This document shows positions 9,245 through 20,039 of a DNA stretch of 64,000 nucleotides, in pieces. A model generated the notes under the pieces. That model did not search any database. It had not been told where the DNA came from and saw only the letters and a program-made list of their open reading frames with translations. The translations under genes and the position numbers were made by a program. The first letter of the stretch is position 1; each line of letters opens with the position of its first letter. Source of the DNA: Diadema antillarum (Eukaryota). Location of the stretch: assembly GCF_040938485.1 (NCBI RefSeq), contig NW_027271431.1, positions 2,418,001 to 2,482,000 on the forward strand, in the 5' to 3' direction.

Positions 9245-9445
9245 CGCCGGGTCACCATGGTTGGACAGAGTAAAGTGACGGTACGTGTAGGTGTACCAGC
9301 TCATTTTTTTTTTTTCGTCTTACAACGACAACCGAGTTTTCCAGCGTGCAATCATTCAGAGCGGTGTGTTGGGAGAAGATCTCCTTATCATGAGCGACGA
9401 CGATATCGACGATATGGCAGAAGAATTCGTCGATTCACTGCAAAT
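9245..9445 (+). pseudogene. Decayed fragment paralogous to domain 1 of the downstream cholinesterase-like gene
   Basis: VTMVGQSK...NDNRVFQRAIIQSGVLGEDLLIMSDDDIDDMAEEFVDSLQ versus ITIVGQGK...NDNQVFQRAIIQSGVLEDDLHIMSDDDAEDLADEFADSLQ (about 12393-12577). The frame is broken by a short insertion and a T-run expansion near 9304-9315. Confidence 0.85.
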
Positions 9446-9692
9446 GACTTCGAAACCAACTACGATGATGACGAAACTTCCGACAACGAATCCACCCAAG
9501 GTCTTCAGTATTCATTGGCTTGGACCTAACGGTAGAAGACACCAGCAGGCCGGGGGCGGATCCCACCCTCCCTCCCCTCTTTTTTTAAGGTTAAGTCAGG
9601 CAAGGAGCCTGCAGATCGACGATACTGCTCCCGTTTTCAAGCGATTCAAACAAAATGTGGCACACAATGTTGACGTCAGGGAAATACATGTA

Positions 9693-10239: not shown

Positions 10240-10460
10240 ACAGTTGATGAGAATGATAATAATAATGATGATAATAATAATGATAATAATAATGTTTATA
10301 ATAGCTTTTTGTACATAGCACGTTTTAGTCTTGTTAAGAATTTCGTACGGTTTATTGCCCCAGTCACTGGATACATTTTCCAACCAGCACTGACATTCCT
10401 CACGTCTCCACCCCCTGGGAAGCATTCCAACCAGTCGCTCTTAGAATAGTGTATGCCCTG
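10240..10460 (-). repeat. Possible SINE/LINE 3'-end remnant with (AAT/GAT)n tail
   Basis: (AAT/GAT)n next to ttattgccccagtcactggatac...cctgggaagcattcca, resembling a common invertebrate SINE tail from memory only. Confidence 0.3.
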
Positions 10461-11461
10461 AGCATTTCATTAAGTGGATCTTAAATATCTTACACGAAGT
10501 TAAAAGCTGAATTATCATCTCAATCAAAGCCACACCAACCCTATGAAAGGATGTACACTTCTCAGTTGTGTAGGACTAATTATACATGTAAACTTCACTG
10601 CTTCGTACTTTTTTTGCCAATTTTTGTAGTGGTGTTGGTTGCCGTTTCTTCTATCCTCCAACATGATAAGCTTTGTGATGTAATGTAAAACATTATTGTT
10701 GTATGGGAAAATGTAGATTGACCCTTTAAACTTTAAATCAAAGTGATGTTCTGAGTAAAATGTATGCGCCATTGGAAAAATTTTTAAACATTGAAATAAA
10801 ATGGCGAAAGTTGTTTGTTATGTGAAGACAGATCTTGTCGATTAAAGAGTATGTATGCGCGTAGAGCACACTACAGAGTGGACTTGGCGTAATATAAATT
10901 CATATCTTTATACAGTATCATTATTATTTTAAAAAAAATCATACAACTGCATTTTCTTCTGGTTACGACCATTGAGGCATTTTTAAAATCGCTGCAAGGT
11001 ACCTTATTCTCCTTTCTTTTGGATGATGGTTAGATGTTTAGCCAGTCGGGCGTTGTTATGATTAGTGTTATGATTAACTGAAAAAAATAAAAACTTTAAC
11101 CAGCACCAGTCAACAGAAGCGTATTTCATCAAAAAGCTGTAGGGTCTACGTCTATTTGTCGTGTACAACTGTACTGGCAAATCTCGTCTGAGATGACGCA
11201 TTTCATTGACTGACTGAGATAAAAAAAGAAAAAACGCAGTAAAATACATAACTTTATCAACACGAGTGATTTATAGATTTTTTCCACCCACAAAAAACGC
11301 AAAGAGCAAATAACTTGAGGGGAGGGAATCATCGGTGCAGGGGCGATCTTCAGCTGGAACTATTGTCCACCTCACGACCTGATACGGACTGGCATCCCTG
11401 CCAACTACGCGGGACAAAGTCCGTGCTATCTCGTGCCGTTATTCATTCTCTGCGCTCTCAC

Positions 11462-11476
11462 TGACGCGTGACGTCA
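11462..11476. promoter_or_regulatory. Palindromic CRE site TGACGTCA (11469-11476) plus an adjacent TGACG half-site
   Basis: Exact motif about 340 bp upstream of ATG 11813 in a CpG-containing patch; function untested. Confidence 0.35.
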
Positions 11477-11812
11477 GTCTAAGGCACTGCATAGAATCTA
11501 GAAATTGTTAAATATTTGTACATTCAAATCCATACTGCGAATTTGTTGTAGTGTTCAAACAATTATTTGGTATGAATCGATATTGCGCAGTCATTCTGTG
11601 ATGCTTTCGTTTGGGCACGTGCAGACTACTGCATTTCCTAAAGAAAGTGGCAAATTTATTTCATTCGTCACTTAGAAGGAGATACGGTTGTAACTTTCCA
11701 TCTTTTGACATTACACCTATATCTCAAGTACTAAAGATCCAGAGCTCCTATCATCAGAGCATAAGGGATAATCACTACTACCAGCGCAGATTGGTTTCCG
11801 CGGGATAGGAGG

Positions 11813-13921
11813 ATGGCATTTTTCTCACTTGTGGTCGTATTGTCCATTCTCGCTTATAGTTCTGCGCAGGTCGACATCCTAACCGACCTCGGAACCATTC
11901 GAGGAAGTCAAGATGATCTTAACGGTGAAACTATTAACGACTTTCGAGGAATTCCGTACGCCGAAGCGCCAGTAGGGGAAAGGCGATTTTTTTACCCAGT
12001 GCCAAAATCTTCATGGGGTGACACCGTTTTCAACGCGACCCAATATGGACCTTCGTGTCCACGGGTCTCGCCAAGCCCTGATCAGTATGCGACCATGGAT
12101 GAAGATTGTCTCTTCTTGAACATTATTGTACCAGCAAATGCTGTCACACAAAATAGCGAGCTACCTGTTTTAGTATTCATTCCTGGGCAAGGGGGTGGTG
12201 CTGACTACGTAGGAAGCGAAATGGCCGTTAGAGGATCAGTAATTGTAGTCACCATCAACTATCGCTCCGAAGTTCTTGGTTACTTCAGCACCGGCGACGA
12301 CTGCATACCAGGCAACTATGGATTATGGGATCAGCGCCTTGCCGTAGAGTGGGTGCGAGATAACATAGGTCCATTTGGCGGTAATGGCAGCAGTATCACC
12401 ATCGTTGGACAGGGTAAAGGGGCCGTAGGTGTATCAGCCCAAATTCTTTCGCCTCGTAACGATAACCAAGTTTTCCAGCGTGCAATCATTCAGAGCGGTG
12501 TGTTGGAAGACGATCTTCACATCATGAGTGACGATGACGCTGAGGATCTGGCTGACGAGTTCGCCGATTCACTGCAGTGCAACTCCAGTGCGTGGGCGAG
12601 TCGACTCGATTGCCTGCGAAGTAAATCTTGGCAAGACATTGTTTCAAATAGCCCAGTGCCAGGATTCTTGCCTCGCATCGACGGCGACTTCTTGCCGGAA
12701 CCTGTTGGCGAACTTATAGAAAGGGACGATATTTATCAGTACGATGTCATCTTCGGGTTCAACAGTGACGAAGGAGTCTTGTTATCGAATAATACAAATT
12801 TCCCTAACGTCACCAACGAAGAAGACGTGCGCCAAGTCCTGCTCGATATGTTCATTGATAAGTCCGACAATAGGGAAGATGCCACTTTGGGTTACGAGAT
12901 GATCGATCTCATGTACGTCGATCCTGTCGTCGGTCTAACAAGTGAAGGAGCCGCTGAGAGACTTTTGTTAGCCGTTTACGGAGACGATAAACTTATCTCG
13001 AGATCTGTGAAGTATCTGAGACGTCATTCAGAGAGTCAGCAAGCCAACACGTACATGTACTTCTTCGACTATGTGGATTTTGACTACGTTAGATTAATCT
13101 CTGACCTCAGAACAGGTGCTGCTTCTGGGGAAGAGTTGTTCTACCTCTGGGATTTAGTTCTCGGTGAAAATACAACCCTTGATGCGGCAGATGCGCAGAC
13201 CACCTCAATTCGAACGAACATGACTGGATATTGGACGAACTTCGTCAACACCGGGTATAGTATCTTAATGTCCAAATGATACAGTACATGGATTGCGTGA
13301 AATCGGCAATATTAGTAGAACGCATAAGTGAAGCTGCAGAAAAATCGTCTATAAGTATTTAAATTTCAATACTGCAATTTCTGGATGAGAAGGCTACAAC
13401 ATTTCGCGACGTCACGCATCTACAACGATATAAAGAAAATGTGTGTACAAAATATGTGGGAAGAATTTAACATATTTCAAATTTTCTAGCATTATGAAAA
13501 AGTGCTTCTCGTACGTATTTCAGAAAACGGTGAGACTATCACGAAGATGAAATTTGTACCTTTCATTAAAATCAAATTTTACTCTTCTTGTGAATCGTTG
13601 AAATGACAAACTGTTATAATCTCCTCATCCAGCGATAGTGACACGAAAATCTTTAAAAACACACACATAAAAAATTAAACGTATTGTCCGATCATCTCAT
13701 ACCTTAAATTTCACTGATGTATTCGATTGATATTGCTGCATTTAGCTCCATGTGTACTCAGTACATTATTTTGGTTTCATTTTCCTTTAACCATTTACAA
13801 TTACATCATATCTCATATGACAAGACTGTATAGCAAGCACATGTTAATGTGATCGTCAAATTTGAGCTTGAACAAAAATTATTTCTATAATGTTGCAGAA
13901 AGGTTAAATGTCGGTATAGTA

Positions 13922-13956
<35 letters not shown>

Positions 13957-16900
13957 CCATCAAGCACAACAGTGCATTATGTAAATACAGCACGCACGAC
14001 ATTAGAGAACCGTGGGAAACGGTAATTGTTTGGATATAAAGGTATTTACACGTTCAGTTTTTGTAATCATTATAGTCATTCATTATTTACTGTAGGTCTA
14101 CTGATATTGTCTGGCACTATAACCAGTTCTATGTTTATGAGCATCGAGTTCTGCGGACGAATACTGTGAATAATCCTCAAGTTTTCCATAGAGAGATTGA
14201 TAAGAGAGAAATATGCATGTATTCTGTGTTTTTATTTGAACAAGGAATCCTAATGAAGGCCCTGCCTCTCCGACACCATCGCCAATGTGGCCCCAGTTTG
14301 ACGCGGCGAACGAGACGTATCTCTGGATCAAAAATGCCACTGAGATTGACGAACATCTGAAGGCGGGTTTCACCAAACTTTGGCTGGAATTTATTCCCGA
14401 ACTCCTTACTCGGAACCAGCCGGAGACATGCAGCGCAGAAGCACCCGTCCCTGACATCCTGACAGGAAACGACCGAGACAATGTCGACGAGTTCATTGTT
14501 GTTAGCGTAACTGATTCTGAAGACACTACGCTGGGACAGGTTCGAGGAACCGTGCGCACAGCTGATGAAGGGGTCGGTGGACGACGCATTGCCAGCTTCT
14601 TAGGTTTGCCATACGCAGAGCCACCCATTGGTGACCTCCGCTTCAGGAATTCCAGGATCCTTGAGGACTGGGGAGAAAATACATTCCGCAATGCGACAGA
14701 GTATCCGGCAATTTGTGTACAAGGTGGTGGACTTGGCCAACCGCCACTAGCACCAGTAACCGAGAGTGAAGATTGTCTGTTCTTAAATATCTATGCACCT
14801 GTTATAGAGCCGGACTCATTACCTCTTCCAGTTATTGTTTATCTGCATTCTGGTTTGTACACATCAGGTAACGGTGTGACATACGATGGTTCAACACTCG
14901 CCTCGTATGCTAATGCAGTCATTGTTCCACTTAACTACCGTCTGGGTCCTCTTGGATGGTTGAGCACACTTGATGAGGAGTGTCCTGGTAACTTTGGACT
15001 GATAGACGTTGTCACGGCTCTGCAATGGATTCAGCAATACATCAGCAGTTTCGGAGGAGACCCCAACAGCGTGACAGTGTTTGGAATGGGTACTGGTGCA
15101 CAGCTCGGCCATCTTATATCTCTGAATGGTCTTAATGATGGACTGATGCACAAGATCATTGCACTTGGGGATTCAGTACTTTCTCCGCCTATTCTTAGGG
15201 CATCGACAAAGAATCCTCTAGAGTTAGCTGAGGAACTGGCGCAGAATGTGGAATGTCCCGTGACCACCACACGCGCCCTCGTAGAGTGTCTCAGGAGCAA
15301 ACCCGCTGAGGAAGTGCAACGAGCATCATTCGGCCAGCAAGGTCTTTTCGAATCGAATTTGTTCCCAGTTGTGGATGGGATAGTCCTGAAAAATACATCC
15401 GACAAGATTCTCCAGTCTGGTGATTTCGAAACTATTCCTCTTCTCGTCGGGGCTACAGAGATGGACAACACTATCTTTACAAGCGTTTATTCCCCCACAG
15501 GGTGCCCCAACGATGCGATAGCTACCCGTATTCTCGAAGATGTTGTTGAAAGTATCTACGACGGTCAACCAGAGGTCGTCTCTTTATTGGACATGTTTTA
15601 CCTGACGAGCGACCTGTCTCCGGCTGTGACCTACGACGAGTGCAAGATCGGTCACCAGGTCAGCGAGCTGCTAAGCGATATGTGGTTAAACGTGCCGTTT
15701 TTTGAGACTGCAAGACTCCTAAAACAGGCTGATAATAAGGATATGTATGTCTATTTCTTAGGCTTCCGACCGAGTGATCATCTCTACTCTGCCTTCTTAC
15801 CTCCGTGGGTGGAGCTTACATTCGGTGACGACGTTCCCTATGCATTCGGCTGGCCATATGATAAGACAATTACGGAGAGTGTCGGAATGTGCTTCAGCGT
15901 GGCCGATAGGGTGGTCAGCATTAATTTTATGGAAATGATATCTTCCTTTGCTCGAACAGGGTATGTATAGATACACATTTTTAAATTTCATTGATTTTGT
16001 ATATATCCCTCATATGATTGTGATACTAATTGTGATAACATCGTTGATTGTAATATGGGTTTTTCCGTTCACTTTCGTCAAAATTTCATTCTGTCTAAAG
16101 ATGTCATTTCATTTCAATGATATCGAATGATCACACAGATCAACATTCATATAGTTCATACAATTTGATTTTGTTTAGGATGCAATTTCTGACGAAGGTT
16201 AAAAAATCATTAACAATCATTCATGGCAATTTGGGTATTGTTTTCCGTTGCTGCTTATATGGTACTTTCTACCTTTCTGTTAAAATATTTAAGGCAAACA
16301 CTCTAAAAGTGCCTGAGTCGGACCTTTCCTTATATCAAATTATAAGGAACCCACTTTTCTATACAAAACTAAGGAAGTAATGCAATACACTCCTGTATCT
16401 AGTGAGGGGTTTGATAAGTCACCTGTTTATAAATCATAATTTTATGACCATCAATTGTTAATTTTTGTTCGGCCCTGTGCCACTGTCATCCGTTTGGATT
16501 TTGAATATTAGACTGCCCTTCCTGACTGTCTAAAAGGCAGGCTTTATTTAATTGAAGAAGATGCATCCCTCTGGTACATAACTGCATGCCCATGTGATCA
16601 TGAGCAGGAATCCCTAAAGTTATCTAAATGCGCAAATCAAATAAAAGATTCTATACAAAATGCTTAACACAAACACAATCAAAAAGATACATGAAAGGAG
16701 AATGCTTGTGAAAATATCATGCTAAAAGTATTTATGCTCATAGAAACGTTATAACAATATTTTGTCGTTTCAAATTGTGAATACATTTATTTCTCATTCA
16801 CTTTGCATCGTAATAGTGTTCCCCAGACAGTTCTTCCTGAAGTGAGGCAGTGGGATCCCTTCGACCCAGCCTCGTACAACGCCCTTATCTTGGACGTTTG

Positions 16901-17213
16901 CCCCTACCAGGAGCCCCTACCCAGAGGAGCAGAGAAAGACATCTTCTGGAACACCATCATCGCTGGCTTAAGCAACTTCGACGCCTACAATGATGACGAT
17001 CCTCCTATCACGACAACGGTTGAGACTTCGACGCCCAGTCCGTCCACGGTTTCCAGTTTCATTGGCTTGGACGTAACTGTGGAAGAGGCCGGCCGGATTA
17101 TCGGTGGTTTAATAATCGCTCTCGTTGTGTTAGGAGGACTGATCCTTACTGCAATCTTGATAATGTGCGTCTCCTCTTGTTGTCGATCCAATACTTCAAA
17201 CAAGCCTGTGTAA
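11813..17213 (+). CDS. Tandem double cholinesterase/carboxylesterase-fold type I membrane protein, 1184 aa, predicted catalytically dead; exons 11813-13254, 14245-15960, 16817-17213
   Basis: GT-AG junctions, both phase 2 (NTG^NPNE and RTG^VPQT); total 3555 nt = 1185 codons. Signal peptide MAFFSLVVVLSILAYSSA. Two domains with GIPYAEAP/GLPYAEPP, EDCLFLNI, INYR/LNYRLG and GNYGL.D/GNFGL.D. Ser/Thr/Pro stalk, TM IIGGLIIALVVLGGLILTAILIMCV, short tail. Confidence 0.9.
13289..13760. mobile_element. Degenerate Kolobok-like MITE in intron 1 of the cholinesterase-like gene
   Basis: tggattgcgtg..gcaatattagtagaacgcat at the left and tttcactgatgtattc..tattgctgcattt at the right match the arms of 45425-45985. 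Confidence 0.55.
13921..13956. repeat. (CA)n microsatellite
   Basis: Seen directly. Confidence 0.95.
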
Positions 17214-17316
17214 TCACGTGGTCATGACGTGACTACACCATCCCAATCGACAGGGCCATGAGATGCCAGGGACTTCGACCTTCCTCGGTATATAGAATTA
17301 ATTCAGATCTAATTAA

Positions 17317-17924
17317 AGGGGAAATCCAGTCCAAATATAAGTTAGTCTGATATGAAAGAGTGAAATATTACAAGTTCAACAGTATAATTTTGATCGAAAT
17401 CTTATGAAAGATAAGGAAGTTATGACATTTTTAAGTTTCGCTATTTTGGGGGGAAACAGTTCTTGAACAGTCATTATGAATATGCAAGTCGCAAAGTGAG
17501 CATTTCATTCCTTCACAACTTACCATATACTAGTTTGTACATAAAAATTTTTGAAATTTCCAGCTTTTCATTCAAACGCAATTATGCCCGAGGCTCAAAT
17601 CCTTGTGTATCAAACTAATTACTATTCTGAAGTTATTCAACCAGAAATAACATCATGTTTCAGACTTCAGGGACAGAAACATTTAATATTTGTCATTGTT
17701 TGTACACGATCAATGGAAAATTCTGAGGGTATGACATGGTTAGCTCACCTTTTGCATATTCATATCCACTGTACAAGAACTGTGTCGCAAAAATTAGCAA
17801 AACTTCAAAATGTCATTATAACTTCCTTATTTTTCTTCCGATTTCAGTCAATCTTTTACCGTTGAACTCATAAGATTTTACTCTTTTTAACCAGACTAAC
17901 CTATATTTGGACTGGATTTCCTCT
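17317..17924. mobile_element. Kolobok-like MITE (608 bp) with TTAA target duplication
   Basis: TTAA at 17313-17316 and 17925-17928; TIRs AGGGGAAATCCAGTCCAAATATA / TATATTTGGACTGGATTTCCTCT (1 mismatch). Confidence 0.85.
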
Positions 17925-20039
17925 TTAAGGAGTATAGTCGTAGGTCATCGCCATTGTCTCGGTGTAGCTATACCTTTCTGTTACAAAGCTGATGTTGTGA
18001 TAACTTGGGATCATATAATTCATTCTATATGCCATGAAGTAAAGTTCACGACATTTCATGATTGTCTTAGCATAATAAGTGTCTATTTTGTTAGGTCTTG
18101 GCCTTGTGGGCAGAGTATATAGCGGCACCAAAGATTACTCGTATATAGAAATTAACAAACTTCAGTCATCTCCTATGAATATCGTATTAAGGCTATAAAA
18201 ACATGCTACGGTAGGATGGAAACTATCCATGCCCGCCTGTCTGGGACTCATCATGAGTGACATTAATGCTTACATTTTGTTGTGTCTTATGTCGAACTGC
18301 CACCACTCGATTTTCACCCATCTTCCAGTCGTTCATTTATAGTGACACTATTTGTCCTCTCAAAAGTGCCTTGCTGAGATACCTATCTCGCAATGTTTTG
18401 TTGACGAAGCCGTAAGGGTTTATTCGAAAGTGTTTCTCATAAACTATACATACTATAGGCTAGCCCGACCAGACGCTGATTATACAGTGACTGGGTTGTG
18501 TATAGTTACATATAGGCCTGTATATACTGTCACTAATGAATGTATGGTATAAGGTTTAATAGAAGCATAATCAGGTACTTATTTTTGTCTTTTTTCATTA
18601 GAATGAAGTCTCCAGATATTGCTAAATTCAAGCGTAGAAAGGGAGAAAACGTCTGTAACAACATCTAGCATTAGCTGTGCAAACTTTACACAGCTGTTCT
18701 CTCCTAGAGAATCCAGTTCTTCCATAATCATTTGTCATTGTTTGTAAGTCAACTTGCTGAACATTTTCACTATCGTAACAAGTATGCAACTAAATGTTTT
18801 AAAAAAAATCTCGGAAACAGCATAAATAAGCATAATCAACAAGCTGCAATCAAACAAACAAAAATGCATATTACAGGAAAAGTAAACAGATTTAAGATAT
18901 CAAAGGTTAATAGTTTATGTCTAGGTTGTCTCCTTAAAAAATATTGCAATTCTGTTTGCAGATTATCGTACTGAAAACTCTTTTGTAACTTAAGAACGTG
19001 TGGATTTAAATGTACTTGCTGCATTTCATTGCGATCTGCTTTGTTGTAGGTTGGGAATTTTTTCGTTTGGGGTATTTATCAGTTGCGCTATGGATGATGT
19101 GTGTAAAAGAGTTGTGAAACAGCTTATAGTGTAGATAGTCCATGATAAGAGCTCTGTACCAATGTGATTATTGTATTTTATTGTATTGTTTCTTCTCCGA
19201 TAGAAGTCATGTATCTTCAGGATATAATATTGATATATAATGCAATTTTCTTTTATATAAATTGACATCATAATGTTACCCCAATAGCGCCAAAAACTGC
19301 ACATTCAATTTCTTTTTACCTCAATCTTAACGTCATTTTAAACATCCATCCAAGGCATATTTCAGGGTCTATATACGATGTGTAATATCTTCATAGGCAT
19401 TATTGTTTGTCCTCTGTGCACTGTGCTCGGTGCGAAGGTACAACACAAAGTGCGGTGATCATGCTTGATGATTACTAATGTAGCAACCATTGTGTATGAA
19501 AATTGTAGTGAAACAGTGCGTAATGATCAAATATTACGAATGATAATAGTGTTCCTAGTGTCCCTTTCTCAGTGATAACACATTGTAGTAAAACTGTTTA
19601 ATGCTTAAAAAGACGTGTATATTATGTATATACATGATGTATATATATATATGTGTGTGTGTGTGTGTTTTATATGTATATATATATATGTATATATAAT
19701 TATATATATATATATAAATACAGCGTGTATATGCATTTCGGTCTTATAGTAATAACAGAAAATGGAATGATAGCAAGTGGTAGAAAATAAAAAGTTGATT
19801 TATATTTTTTTTTTCCTCCTTCGATATGTCTCCTAAAGAGAAATAAACAATGAAAATCATTAATGGAGCTTCATTGCAGATTAGCAGATTAGCACTTTTA
19901 TCAGGATATCTCTCGCTTCCGCAACTGCACAAAAATGCTAAACGCACGCAAGCACACACTCACACCCATAACTGAATATATATATATATATATATATACA
20001 TATATAATGGGATGGTGCTGATGCTCGTACCTTACGCCT

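What the first reader, a model, noticed from the sequence alone, without database searches (positions are those of the whole stretch)
11813..17213. Membrane protein with two tandem dead cholinesterase domains: a doubled neuroligin-like adhesion molecule
Seen: signal peptide, two full alpha/beta-hydrolase domains in one frame (exon 2 runs from the end of domain 1 into domain 2 without a stop), Thr/Ser/Pro stalk, one TM, a juxtamembrane Cys cluster and a roughly 13-aa tail ending NKPV. The nucleophile elbows are GQGKG (GGT at 12413) and GMGTG (GGT at 15089) instead of GESAG. The His position reads AASGEEL and LTFGDDV. Structural Cys pairs (C..EDCL; C..CLRSK) are kept in both domains. Known: neuroligins, gliotactin, neurotactin and the thyroglobulin ChEL domain are catalytically dead single-domain members of this fold. 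Inference: a lineage-specific adhesion, receptor or ligand-binding protein; the tandem could mimic the neuroligin dimer within one chain.
Basis: partly seen in the sequence, partly recalled or inferred. Interest (0 to 1): 0.85.

Follow-up and report, generated by a model that had tools for sequence, protein, structure and literature searches.

The report
Sea-urchin membrane protein, two dead esterase domains
This is a real three-exon sea-urchin (Diadema antillarum) gene for a membrane protein carrying two esterase-fold domains that have both lost their catalytic residues; it belongs to an old, unnamed family in which the first domain still looks active in sea stars and acorn worms, so it is not a doubled neuroligin.

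Summary
Exons 11813-13254, 14245-15960 and 16817-17213 (+) splice into an 1184-aa protein: signal peptide, two COesterase domains (Pfam E 4e-105 and 7e-108), stalk, one TM, 15-aa tail ending NKPV. It is identical to NCBI's "uncharacterized protein" XP_071500051.1 of Diadema antillarum. The elbows read GQGKG and GMGTG, and the His positions are Ser and Phe.

The architecture is not lineage-specific. The same two-domain type I protein, with the same two introns, occurs in other urchins, sea stars and hemichordates, and a brachiopod has a three-domain relative.

- **D2:** it lacks the Ser in all 17 ambulacrarian orthologues and forms one clade (99/98).
- **D1:** it keeps the Ser, acid and His in sea stars and hemichordates and lost Ser and His only in echinoids.
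- **Neuroligins:** both domains fall outside the neuroligin clade (99/99). D2 is at best its weakly supported sister (54/96). The neurexin-contact residues and the long PDZ-ending tail are absent.
- **Selection:** dN/dS against D. setosum is 0.26 (D1 0.39, D2 0.15), so the gene is maintained.
- **Fold:** AlphaFold gives pTM 0.77, which suggests fixed D1-D2 packing, but I could not inspect the geometry.

No RNA data were obtainable, and the function is inferred. An earlier scan note on exon 2 of this same window agrees with the exon arithmetic.

The parts
11813..13254 (+). Coding exon 1: signal peptide (11813-11869) and the body of domain 1 up to ...FVNTG. It ends in phase 2, with donor GTATAG.
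12407..12421 (+). Domain 1 nucleophile elbow GQGKG. Gly replaces the Ser; sea stars and hemichordates mostly have GESAG here.
13118..13138 (+). Domain 1 His position, AASGEEL (His to Ser). The acid position (FNSDEG, 12758-12775) is kept.
13255..14244 (+). Intron 1 (990 nt, GT-AG, phase 2). It contains a (CA)n microsatellite at about 13925-13957 and is 85% identical to D. setosum, against 95-96% for the flanking exons.
14245..15960 (+). Coding exon 2 (1716 nt = 572 codons, symmetric phase 2/2). It holds the C-terminal ~55 aa of domain 1 (to 14407), the linker with invariant Cys543 (14408-14524) and the body of domain 2 up to ...FARTG.
15083..15097 (+). Domain 2 elbow GMGTG. The Ser is absent in all 17 ambulacrarian orthologues.
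15815..15835 (+). Domain 2 His position, LTFGDDV (His to Phe, as in most echinoderm orthologues and in Lingula D3). The acid position reads ATEMDN (15452-15469; Asp in place of Glu).
15961..16816 (+). Intron 2 (856 nt, GT-AG, phase 2). It lies at the site homologous to intron 1 within the fold (after ..TG) and is 83% identical to D. setosum.
16817..17213 (+). Coding exon 3: the end of the domain 2 fold with invariant Cys1081 (to 16973), the Thr/Ser/Pro stalk (16974-17078), the conserved juxtamembrane IGL.(V/L)T..EA motif plus the TM helix (17079-17165), the tail CVSSCCRSNTSNKPV (17166-17210) and the stop TAA.
9252..9539 (+). Degenerate relic of a paralogous copy. 9252-9442 is 77% identical to exon 1 12396-12576, and 9473-9539 is 78% identical to exon 3 17022-17086. 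It has no intact ORF and is absent from the second D. antillarum contig and from D. setosum within 3 kb upstream.

Best explanation
**Shown**
- Window 11813-17213 (+) is one intact, selectively maintained three-exon gene of the sea urchin Diadema antillarum.
- It encodes an 1184-aa type I membrane glycoprotein: signal peptide, carboxylesterase-fold domain D1, a 39-aa linker, carboxylesterase-fold domain D2, a mucin-like stalk, a TM helix and a 15-aa tail.
- It belongs to an unnamed family found in echinoids, asteroids and hemichordates, with a three-domain relative in a brachiopod.
- In this family the membrane-proximal domain D2 had lost its nucleophile before echinoderms and hemichordates split.
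- The distal domain D1 keeps the Ser, acid and His positions outside echinoids.
- In the echinoid stem D1 also lost Ser and His, both domains changed fast, and the tail shrank to about 12-15 aa ending NKPV.

**Inferred**
- The Diadema protein no longer hydrolyses esters. It works as a cell-surface binding module, either a receptor, adhesion or scaffold protein or a ligand trap. I give about 35% to a protein partner, 25% to a small-molecule or lipid ligand held in the former gorge, and the rest to unknown.
- D1 and D2 are probably packed rigidly against each other. This may be through the helices that make the dimer in cholinesterases and neuroligins, and may be stapled by the two invariant family-specific cysteines C543 and C1081.
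- With so short a tail, any signalling must go through partners in the membrane or outside. The conserved C-terminal Val may serve export or PDZ-type docking.
For: - **Gene model:** GT-AG exons, no internal stop, identical to XP_071500051.1. Exon 2 carries the end of the D1 fold and the start of D2 in one ORF, and D2 has no signal peptide of its own.
- **Fold:** PF00135 hits twice. The AF2 model has mean pLDDT 83 and pTM 0.77, and its domains superpose on neuroligin, BChE and CES structures at TM 0.80-0.88 normalised to the target.
- **Dead sites and their history:** ortholog alignments.
- **Family and clades:**. The D2 clade has 99/98 support and the echinoderm D1 clade 96/80. The echinoid stem branches are long (0.84 and 0.99).
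- **Conserved gene structure:** shown in Asterias, Saccoglossus and S. purpuratus.
- **Purifying selection:** omega is 0.255 overall, 0.39 for D1 and 0.15 for D2. Exons are 94-96% identical to D. setosum against 83-85% for introns.
- **Other conserved features:** invariant C543 and C1081, the NKPV end in three echinoid genera, and the juxtamembrane motif across the family.
Against: - No RNA evidence could be obtained: no run was listed and no junction-spanning transcript ORF was found. The single-transcript claim therefore rests on ORF continuity and on concordant predictions in more than ten species.
- Loss of activity is inferred from sequence only.
- The inter-domain geometry and the proposed C543-C1081 disulfide could not be inspected, because no coordinates were given.
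- No partner, tissue or stage is known.
- D1 of echinoderms and D1 of hemichordates were not recovered as one clade. Forcing them together is marginally rejected (p-AU 0.009 and 0.025, groups named after seeing the tree). Common origin of the whole architecture therefore rests on D2, the intron positions and the layout.
- D1 is under weaker constraint (omega 0.39).
Confidence: 0.6

Rival explanations
1. It is a true neuroligin, or a duplicated one. It would bind neurexin across a cell contact, the two domains replacing the neuroligin homodimer.
For: - Neuroligins are the best PDB sequence hits for both domains, at 5.7e-57 and 6.2e-66, and the best fold hits.
- Gly stands at the nucleophile position, as in neuroligins.
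- The layout stalk + TM is shared.
- In the best tree D2 (+ Lingula D3) is sister to the neuroligin clade with 54/96 support.
Against: - The neuroligin clade (99/99), which includes a hemichordate neuroligin-like protein, excludes both domains.
- The closest single-domain relatives of D1 are carboxylesterases and cholinesterase-like enzymes.
- Of the neuroligin-1 neurexin-site residues Q395/E397/L399/N400/D402 (PMC11811269), D1 reads R,D,Y,Q,D and D2 reads S,D,E,T,P.
- The His kept by the vertebrate, amphioxus and hemichordate neuroligins sampled is lost here.
- The tail is 15 aa and ends NKPV rather than a TTRV-type PDZ ligand.
- The PDB margin over ChE and CES is small for D1.
Confidence: 0.05
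2. It is still an enzyme. One domain would retain hydrolase or transferase activity using another nucleophile or a bound cofactor.
For: - D1 keeps the acid residue (FNSDEG) and a Gly-rich stretch (PGQGGG) where the consensus oxyanion motif HGGG sits.
- The ancestral D1 has a complete catalytic triad on sequence in sea stars and hemichordates.
- Purifying selection continues.
Against: - Both elbows have Gly at the nucleophile position, and both His positions are replaced (Ser in D1, Phe in D2), consistently in Diadema, Strongylocentrotus and Lytechinus. An unassigned echinoid-like D1 exon (P0264) and D2 exon (P0004) show the same replacements.
- No Ser, Cys or Asp sits at the elbow.
- The D2 oxyanion motif reads HSG.
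Confidence: 0.05
3. It is a gene-model artefact: two neighbouring single-domain esterase genes wrongly fused.
For: - Many two-domain 'proteins' of insects, bivalves and a catfish have D1 and D2 as within-species sisters. Some of these may be fused predictions of tandem genes.
- No RNA reads were available here.
Against: - The last ~55 residues of the D1 fold are encoded at the start of exon 2, in frame and without a stop before D2.
- D2 has no start codon with a signal peptide, and D1 has no stop before the donor site.
- There is one signal peptide and one TM in total.
- The same layout and intron sites are found in Asterias, Saccoglossus and S. purpuratus.
- D1 and D2 are anciently diverged (27% identity), not neighbouring recent copies.
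Confidence: 0.03
4. It is a decaying gene: after losing catalysis the locus is drifting towards a pseudogene and has no function.
For: - Both catalytic sites are destroyed.
- The echinoid branches are long.
- D1 omega is 0.39, higher than D2.
- A degenerate relic of a paralogue lies 2.3 kb upstream.
Against: - The 1184-codon ORF is intact in two Diadema species and on a second D. antillarum contig.
- Omega is 0.255, with 80.5 non-synonymous differences over 2724 sites against 90.5 synonymous over 828.
- Introns diverge three times faster than exons.
- The doubly dead state is shared by echinoids as distant as Diadema and Strongylocentrotus.
Confidence: 0.05

Closest known systems
Neuroligins (non-catalytic cholinesterase-like adhesion molecules)
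   Same: - COesterase fold with Gly at the nucleophile position.
- First two disulfide loops.
- O-glycosylated stalk, single TM, type I topology.
- Best PDB matches.
- D2 is the weakly supported sister of the neuroligin clade.
   Different: - Two domains in one chain.
- Outside the neuroligin clade.
- His lost.
- Neurexin-contact residues not kept.
- 15-aa tail with no TTRV-type PDZ ligand or gephyrin-binding region.
- The family's D1 keeps the catalytic triad outside echinoids.
Carboxylesterases and cholinesterase-like enzymes of deuterostomes (CES, bile-salt-activated lipase, AChE-like)
   Same: - D1 is closest to these by sequence, at 30-34% identity.
- D1 of sea-star and hemichordate orthologues mostly has GESAG (15 of 17 domain rows), an acid and the His.
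- Same fold.
   Different: - The Diadema D1 has no Ser or His.
- It is fused to a second, dead domain and a membrane anchor.
- It lies outside the echinoderm/hemichordate AChE-like clade, which has 100/99 support.
Gliotactin, neurotactin, glutactin and the thyroglobulin ChEL domain (other dead members of the fold)
   Same: A non-catalytic COesterase domain used as a binding or dimerising module on the cell surface or in the secretory pathway (PMC5943944).
   Different: - Those have a single ChE-like domain. This is my own knowledge; none was included in the trees.
- Neurotactin is type II.
- No tandem form is described in the literature I could search.
Tandem active/inactive catalytic-domain receptors (receptor tyrosine phosphatases D1/D2, JAK kinase/pseudokinase). 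This is an analogy only.
   Same: The ancestral layout pairs one apparently active domain with a permanently dead paralogous domain in one chain.
   Different: - Unrelated folds.
- Here both domains are extracellular and the dead one is membrane-proximal.
- In echinoids both are dead.
Multi-COesterase proteins of other phyla: Lingula XP (1740 aa, 3 domains), tunicates (Clavelina, Phallusia 2 domains; Styela 4), bivalves and insects
   Same: - Several COesterase domains in one predicted chain.
- Lingula and Styela end with a dead domain plus a TM. Lingula D3 falls in the ambulacrarian D2 clade and shares the His to Phe change.
   Different: - In insects, bivalves and the catfish both domains have the full triad positions and are within-species sisters, which points to independent recent duplications or fused models.
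- Tunicate domains group with bile-salt-lipase-like and amphioxus CES-like enzymes, not with this family.

Membership tests
Carboxylesterase type B / cholinesterase fold (Pfam PF00135) | Profile match above the curated threshold over most of the domain | tested here: met
   There are two hits, 353 and 362 bits against a cut-off of 27, covering profile positions 5-471 of 515 in exons 1 and 2. The rest of each domain lies in the next exon.
Carboxylesterase type B / cholinesterase fold (Pfam PF00135) | Predicted alpha/beta-hydrolase structure superposable on solved members | tested here: met
   The AF2 model has mean pLDDT 83. Foldseek gives TM 0.80-0.88 (normalised to the target) to neuroligin, BChE, CES1 and AChE chains.
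Carboxylesterase type B / cholinesterase fold (Pfam PF00135) | First two conserved disulfide loops | tested here: met
   C82/C99 and C256/C267 in D1, and C638/C658 and C818/C829 in D2, are invariant in 17 orthologues. The pairing itself is inferred.
Active carboxylesterase/cholinesterase | Ser-Glu/Asp-His triad with a GxSxG elbow | tested here: not met
   D1 has GQGKG and His replaced by Ser. D2 has GMGTG and His replaced by Phe. Only the acid is kept (Glu in D1, Asp in D2).
Neuroligin | Placement inside the neuroligin clade | tested here: not met
   The neuroligin clade (vertebrate, amphioxus, hemichordate, spider) has 99/99 support and excludes D1 and D2. D2 + Lingula D3 is its sister with only 54/96 support.
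Neuroligin | Neurexin-binding residues (neuroligin-1 Q395, E397, L399, N400, D402; PMC11811269) | tested here: not met
   D1 reads R,D,Y,Q,D and D2 reads S,D,E,T,P at the aligned positions. The invertebrate neuroligin-like proteins in the same alignment also differ here, so this test is weak.
Neuroligin | One ChE-like domain with Ser replaced by Gly and the His retained | tested here: not met
   There are two domains. Gly is present, but the His is lost in both.
Neuroligin | Long cytoplasmic tail ending in a type I PDZ ligand (HSTTRV in Nlgn2; PMC11811269) | tested here: not met
   The tail is 15 aa and ends NKPV.
Neuroligin | Dimer through a four-helix bundle of helices alpha3(7,8) and alpha10 (PMC5943944) | not testable with these tools
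   Both helices are predicted in both domains, and pTM 0.77 suggests fixed packing. No coordinates were returned. The neuroligin-1 dimer residues F458/M459/W463 are not conserved.
Unnamed tandem COesterase membrane-protein family of Ambulacraria | Signal peptide, D1, D2, TM and tail in about 1140-1240 aa | tested here: met
   17 orthologues from 10 species share this layout.
Unnamed tandem COesterase membrane-protein family of Ambulacraria | D2 orthology and a dead D2 elbow | tested here: met
   The D2 clade has 99/98 support. The elbow is G[HMYLF][GKD][STA]G in all.
Unnamed tandem COesterase membrane-protein family of Ambulacraria | Three coding exons with both introns at the homologous ..(T/N/F)G | (N/V/K)P site of each domain | tested here: met
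   Seen in Diadema, D. setosum, and Asterias, Saccoglossus and S. purpuratus.
Unnamed tandem COesterase membrane-protein family of Ambulacraria | D1 orthology across echinoderms and hemichordates | tested here: inconclusive
   The echinoderm D1 clade has 96/80 support and the hemichordate D1 clade is separate in an unresolved backbone. Forcing one clade costs 13.5-17.5 lnL, with p-AU 0.025-0.009, and the groups were named post hoc.

The most novel reading that the evidence does not exclude
This would be an ancient bilaterian family of membrane-anchored esterase-plus-pseudoesterase tandems, in three parts:

- The dead membrane-proximal domain (D2, with Lingula D3) would be the sister lineage of neuroligins, so a single early loss of the nucleophile gave rise to both.
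- The two domains of one chain would form an intramolecular version of the cholinesterase/neuroligin four-helix-bundle dimer, locked by a family-specific C543-C1081 disulfide.
- Echinoids would then have converted the whole ectodomain into a pure receptor by killing D1.
Probability: 0.15. Interest if true: 0.75.

Novelty: new variant of a known kind. Interest (0 to 1): 0.55.

Why it matters
Non-catalytic cholinesterase-fold proteins such as neuroligins, gliotactin, neurotactin and the thyroglobulin ChEL domain are the standard example of an enzyme fold turned into a binding module. As far as I know, all described ones carry a single such domain that works as a homodimer.

This family puts two long-diverged copies of the fold in one chain on a membrane anchor. 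Different lineages preserve successive stages:

- Two triad-bearing domains plus a dead one in a brachiopod.
- One triad-bearing domain plus a dead one in sea stars and acorn worms.
- Two dead domains in sea urchins.

That gives a natural series for asking what a dead partner domain does for an active one. It also lets one ask how a surface esterase becomes a receptor or adhesion protein, and whether neuroligins arose from the same early loss of the nucleophile.

Every member is labelled "uncharacterized protein" or carries a misleading automatic name such as "neuroligin-4, X-linked-like" or "liver carboxylesterase-like". The finding therefore also corrects annotation. It is not a new kind of system, and its function in the urchin remains unknown.

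Tried and rejected
- **RNA support.** A search with a junction-spanning piece (aa 400-700) for transcript-derived ORFs found only single-domain esterases.
- **Inter-domain geometry.** The model file is not exposed. Foldseek against the PDB, AFDB clusters and the ESM Atlas gave only one-domain-sized superpositions, with TM normalised to the query at most 0.46. The dimer-mimic idea could therefore be neither confirmed nor refuted.
- **Literature.** Searches for the locus names, for tandem or two cholinesterase/carboxylesterase domains, and for cholinesterase-like adhesion molecules in echinoderms found nothing relevant.
- **Recent internal duplication as the origin of the tandem.** Rejected, because D1 and D2 are 27% identical and D2 of echinoderms and hemichordates form a clade without any D1.
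- **Homology with insect, bivalve and fish two-domain predictions.** Rejected, because their domains are within-species sisters.
- **AU test of D2 + neuroligins without Lingula D3 (p 0.005).** Discarded as unfair, since adding Lingula D3 gives the ML topology itself.
- **ESM Atlas feature search.** It returned only generic COesterase clusters.

Full report
**What is in the sequence**

Three long ORFs on the + strand join through canonical GT-AG sites into exons 11813-13254, 14245-15960 and 16817-17213. Together they make 3555 nt with no internal stop, encoding 1184 aa. Both introns are phase 2 and split a Gly codon right after ...NTG / ...RTG, which is the same place in the fold of each domain.

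Exon 2 begins with the last ~55 residues of domain 1 (NPN..WPQF..YLWI..LWLEF). It continues through a 39-residue linker into domain 2 with no stop, no start-plus-signal peptide and no second hydrophobic leader. Two separate genes would therefore truncate the fold of domain 1.

The product is identical to P0001 = XP_071500051.1, "uncharacterized protein [Diadema antillarum]". The window thus comes from the long-spined sea urchin.

Pfam COesterase hits both domains at 3.9e-105 and 6.5e-108. The protein has:
- one signal peptide;
- eleven N-glycosylation sequons in the ectodomain;
- a Thr/Ser/Pro stalk;
- one TM helix;
- a 15-aa tail, CVSSCCRSNTSNKPV.

**Is it one maintained gene?**

The D. setosum orthologue (L001) and a second D. 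antillarum contig (L002, 99.3% identical and collinear over the gene, probably the other haplotype) have the same three exons and intact 1184-codon ORFs.

Between the two Diadema species the exons are 94-96% identical and the introns 83-85%. The Nei-Gojobori dN/dS values are:

| Region | dN/dS |
|---|---|
| Whole protein | 0.255 |
| D1 | 0.39 |
| D2 | 0.15 |
| TM + tail | 0.17 |

Both dead domains are under purifying selection, D2 more strongly. RNA evidence could not be had: no run was listed, and a junction-spanning protein query found no transcript-derived ORFs.

**Relatives and history**

A library-wide HMMER search with exon 2 and word-index searches found proteins of about 1140-1240 aa with two COesterase stretches in these species:
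- S. purpuratus and two Lytechinus species;
- Asterias, Acanthaster (several paralogues) and Patiria;
- the hemichordates Saccoglossus and Glandiceps.

Nearly all are annotated "uncharacterized protein". A few carry misleading automatic names such as "neuroligin-4, X-linked-like" or "liver carboxylesterase-like".

Aligning 17 of them gives the key result:
- **D2.** It lacks the Ser in every species. The elbow is G[HMYLF][GKD][STA]G. The His is mostly Phe, Ala, Tyr or Gln, and only Saccoglossus keeps it.
- **D1 outside echinoids.** In sea stars and hemichordates the elbow is mostly GESAG (GLSAG and GQSAG in two proteins), with an acid (Glu or Asp) and the His.
- **D1 in echinoids.** The elbow reads GQGKG or GQGREG and the His is Ser or Gln. 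An unassigned echinoid-like exon, P0264, shows the same.

Echinoids also share a shortened tail ending NKPV. All members share a juxtamembrane IGL.(L/V)T..EA motif.

Ten Cys are invariant: the two classical loops of each domain, plus C543 just after D1 and C1081 just after D2. These last two have no partner in their own domain. I infer an inter-domain disulfide, but did not test it.

The three-coding-exon structure, with both introns at the homologous site, is conserved in Asterias, Saccoglossus and S. purpuratus.

**Trees of single domains**

I built a quick tree of 103 rows and a careful tree of 57 rows under LG+C20+F+G4. The rows left out of the careful tree are listed. The careful tree shows:

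| Grouping | Support |
|---|---|
| Ambulacrarian D2 clade, with Lingula D3 inside | 99/98 |
| Echinoderm D1 clade | 96/80 |
| Neuroligin clade (vertebrates, amphioxus, a hemichordate, a spider) | 99/99 |
| Echinoderm/hemichordate AChE-like clade | 100/99 |

Neither the neuroligin clade nor the AChE-like clade contains D1 or D2. The backbone is unresolved.

- The D1/D2 split therefore predates the echinoderm-hemichordate divergence, so the tandem is not a recent internal duplication.
- In the best tree D2 + Lingula D3 is sister to the neuroligins, with only 54/96 support.
- Hemichordate D1 groups with a single-domain Glandiceps protein. Forcing it together with echinoderm D1 is marginally rejected (p-AU 0.009 and 0.025; groups named after seeing the tree, and a long oyster branch sits next to echinoderm D1). 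D1 orthology is thus not shown by the tree.
- The echinoid stems are long (0.84 for D1, 0.99 for D2), which fits a burst of change when D1 died.

**Other phyla**

- **Lingula.** XP (1740 aa) has two domains with the full triad positions, a third dead domain (GTGSA, His to Phe) and a C-terminal TM. The family may therefore be older than Ambulacraria.
- **Tunicates.** They have an independent tandem whose last domain is also Ser-less (GQGAG or GQGSG). Its domains group with bile-salt-lipase-like and amphioxus CES-like enzymes.
- **Insects, bivalves and the catfish.** Their two-domain predictions have the triad positions in both domains and within-species sister domains.

**Comparison with neuroligins**

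Neuroligins are the top PDB sequence hits: 5.7e-57 for D1 and 6.2e-66 for D2. Cholinesterases and carboxylesterases follow at 1e-48 and 3e-57. Fold matches do not discriminate between them.

The neuroligin-1 neurexin-site residues are Q395/E397/L399/N400/D402 and the dimer residues are F458/M459/W463 (PMC11811269). At the neurexin site D1 reads R,D,Y,Q,D and D2 reads S,D,E,T,P. The dimer helix is present but differs in sequence. The tail lacks any TTRV-like end.

The protein works like a non-catalytic ChE-fold surface molecule but fails the membership tests for neuroligin.

**Structure**

AlphaFold2 on the full chain, with a 31-sequence alignment (A1), gave mean pLDDT 83 and pTM 0.77. For two ~520-residue domains plus about 100 low-confidence residues, that pTM implies a confidently fixed D1-D2 arrangement.

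In cholinesterases and neuroligins the dimer is a parallel four-helix bundle of alpha3(7,8) and alpha10 (PMC5943944). Whether the intramolecular packing copies it could not be checked, because coordinates are not exposed. No AFDB or Atlas entry matched both domains at once.

**Most likely mechanism**

- **Shown:** a membrane-anchored, glycosylated ectodomain made of two esterase folds with no nucleophile and no His, conserved under selection.
- **Inferred:**
  - It binds rather than hydrolyses.
  - The ancestral protein was a surface carboxylesterase whose dead D2 served as a built-in partner or pedestal.
  - Echinoids turned the whole ectodomain into a receptor, adhesion protein or ligand trap.
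  - With a 15-aa tail, any output must go through associated proteins.
- **Unknown:** partner, tissue and stage.

**Novelty**

The gene is already in public annotation but uncharacterised. I found no paper describing tandem cholinesterase-like membrane proteins. It is a new variant of a known kind, the non-catalytic ChE-fold surface proteins, and not a new kind of system.

An earlier scan note on the same window (s1-211324) pointed out that exon 2 is symmetric. I confirm the arithmetic: 1716 nt with phase 2 at both ends. I add that in S. purpuratus this exon is tandemly duplicated (95% aa identity), giving a three-domain model, LOC105446116.

Noticed in passing
window 9252-9539 (+): A degenerate relic of a paralogous copy lies 2.3 kb upstream of the gene. 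A piece 77% identical to exon 1 (12396-12576) is followed about 30 nt later by a piece 78% identical to exon 3 (17022-17086), and there is no ORF. It is missing from the second D. antillarum contig (L002) and from D. setosum (L001) within their 3-kb flanks.
   Followed up: partly
L005:3255-4997 and L005:5522-7246 (S. purpuratus): Exon 2 is present twice in tandem (95% aa identity), giving the 1769-aa three-domain model LOC105446116 (D1-D2-D2'). The older model XP_797799.2 has two domains. This could be a real exon duplication or two alleles assembled in tandem.
   Followed up: partly
L003:17444-21337 (-) and L003:24128-27988 (+) (Asterias rubens): Two paralogous tandem-domain genes (1207 and 1195 aa, about 95% aa identity) lie head to head. 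Sea stars carry several paralogues of this family (Acanthaster at least 4, Patiria 3), whereas each Diadema assembly sampled showed one.
   Followed up: no
L002 versus window 10457-19313: A second D. antillarum contig carries the same gene at 99.3% identity (dS 0.012). It has an indel of about 880 bp just after the stop codon and loses similarity upstream of window 10457. It is most likely the alternative haplotype with structural differences.
   Followed up: partly
P0169 (Lingula anatina, 1740 aa): This three-domain type I membrane protein has two domains with GESAG and His, then a dead third domain (GTGSA, His to Phe) that falls in the ambulacrarian D2 clade. This hints that the family predates the deuterostome-protostome split.
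   Followed up: partly
P0177, P0179, P0181, P0007 (tunicates): This is an independent tandem COesterase architecture whose last domain also lacks the Ser (GQGAG or GQGSG) but keeps the His. The two-domain forms have no TM, while Styela (4 domains) has one. A dead terminal domain next to triad-bearing ones seems to recur.
   Followed up: no
window 12302 and 14981 (Cys164, Cys727), 15890 (Cys1030): Diadema alone has an extra Cys at the same position of both domains (D.C.PGN) and a third at aa 1030. That gives an odd number (15) of ectodomain cysteines, so at least one is free or intermolecular.
   Followed up: no
window 13925-13957: A (CA)n microsatellite lies inside intron 1.
   Followed up: no
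window 48316-48461: A run of 146 N (assembly gap or masked stretch). I left it untouched.
   Followed up: no
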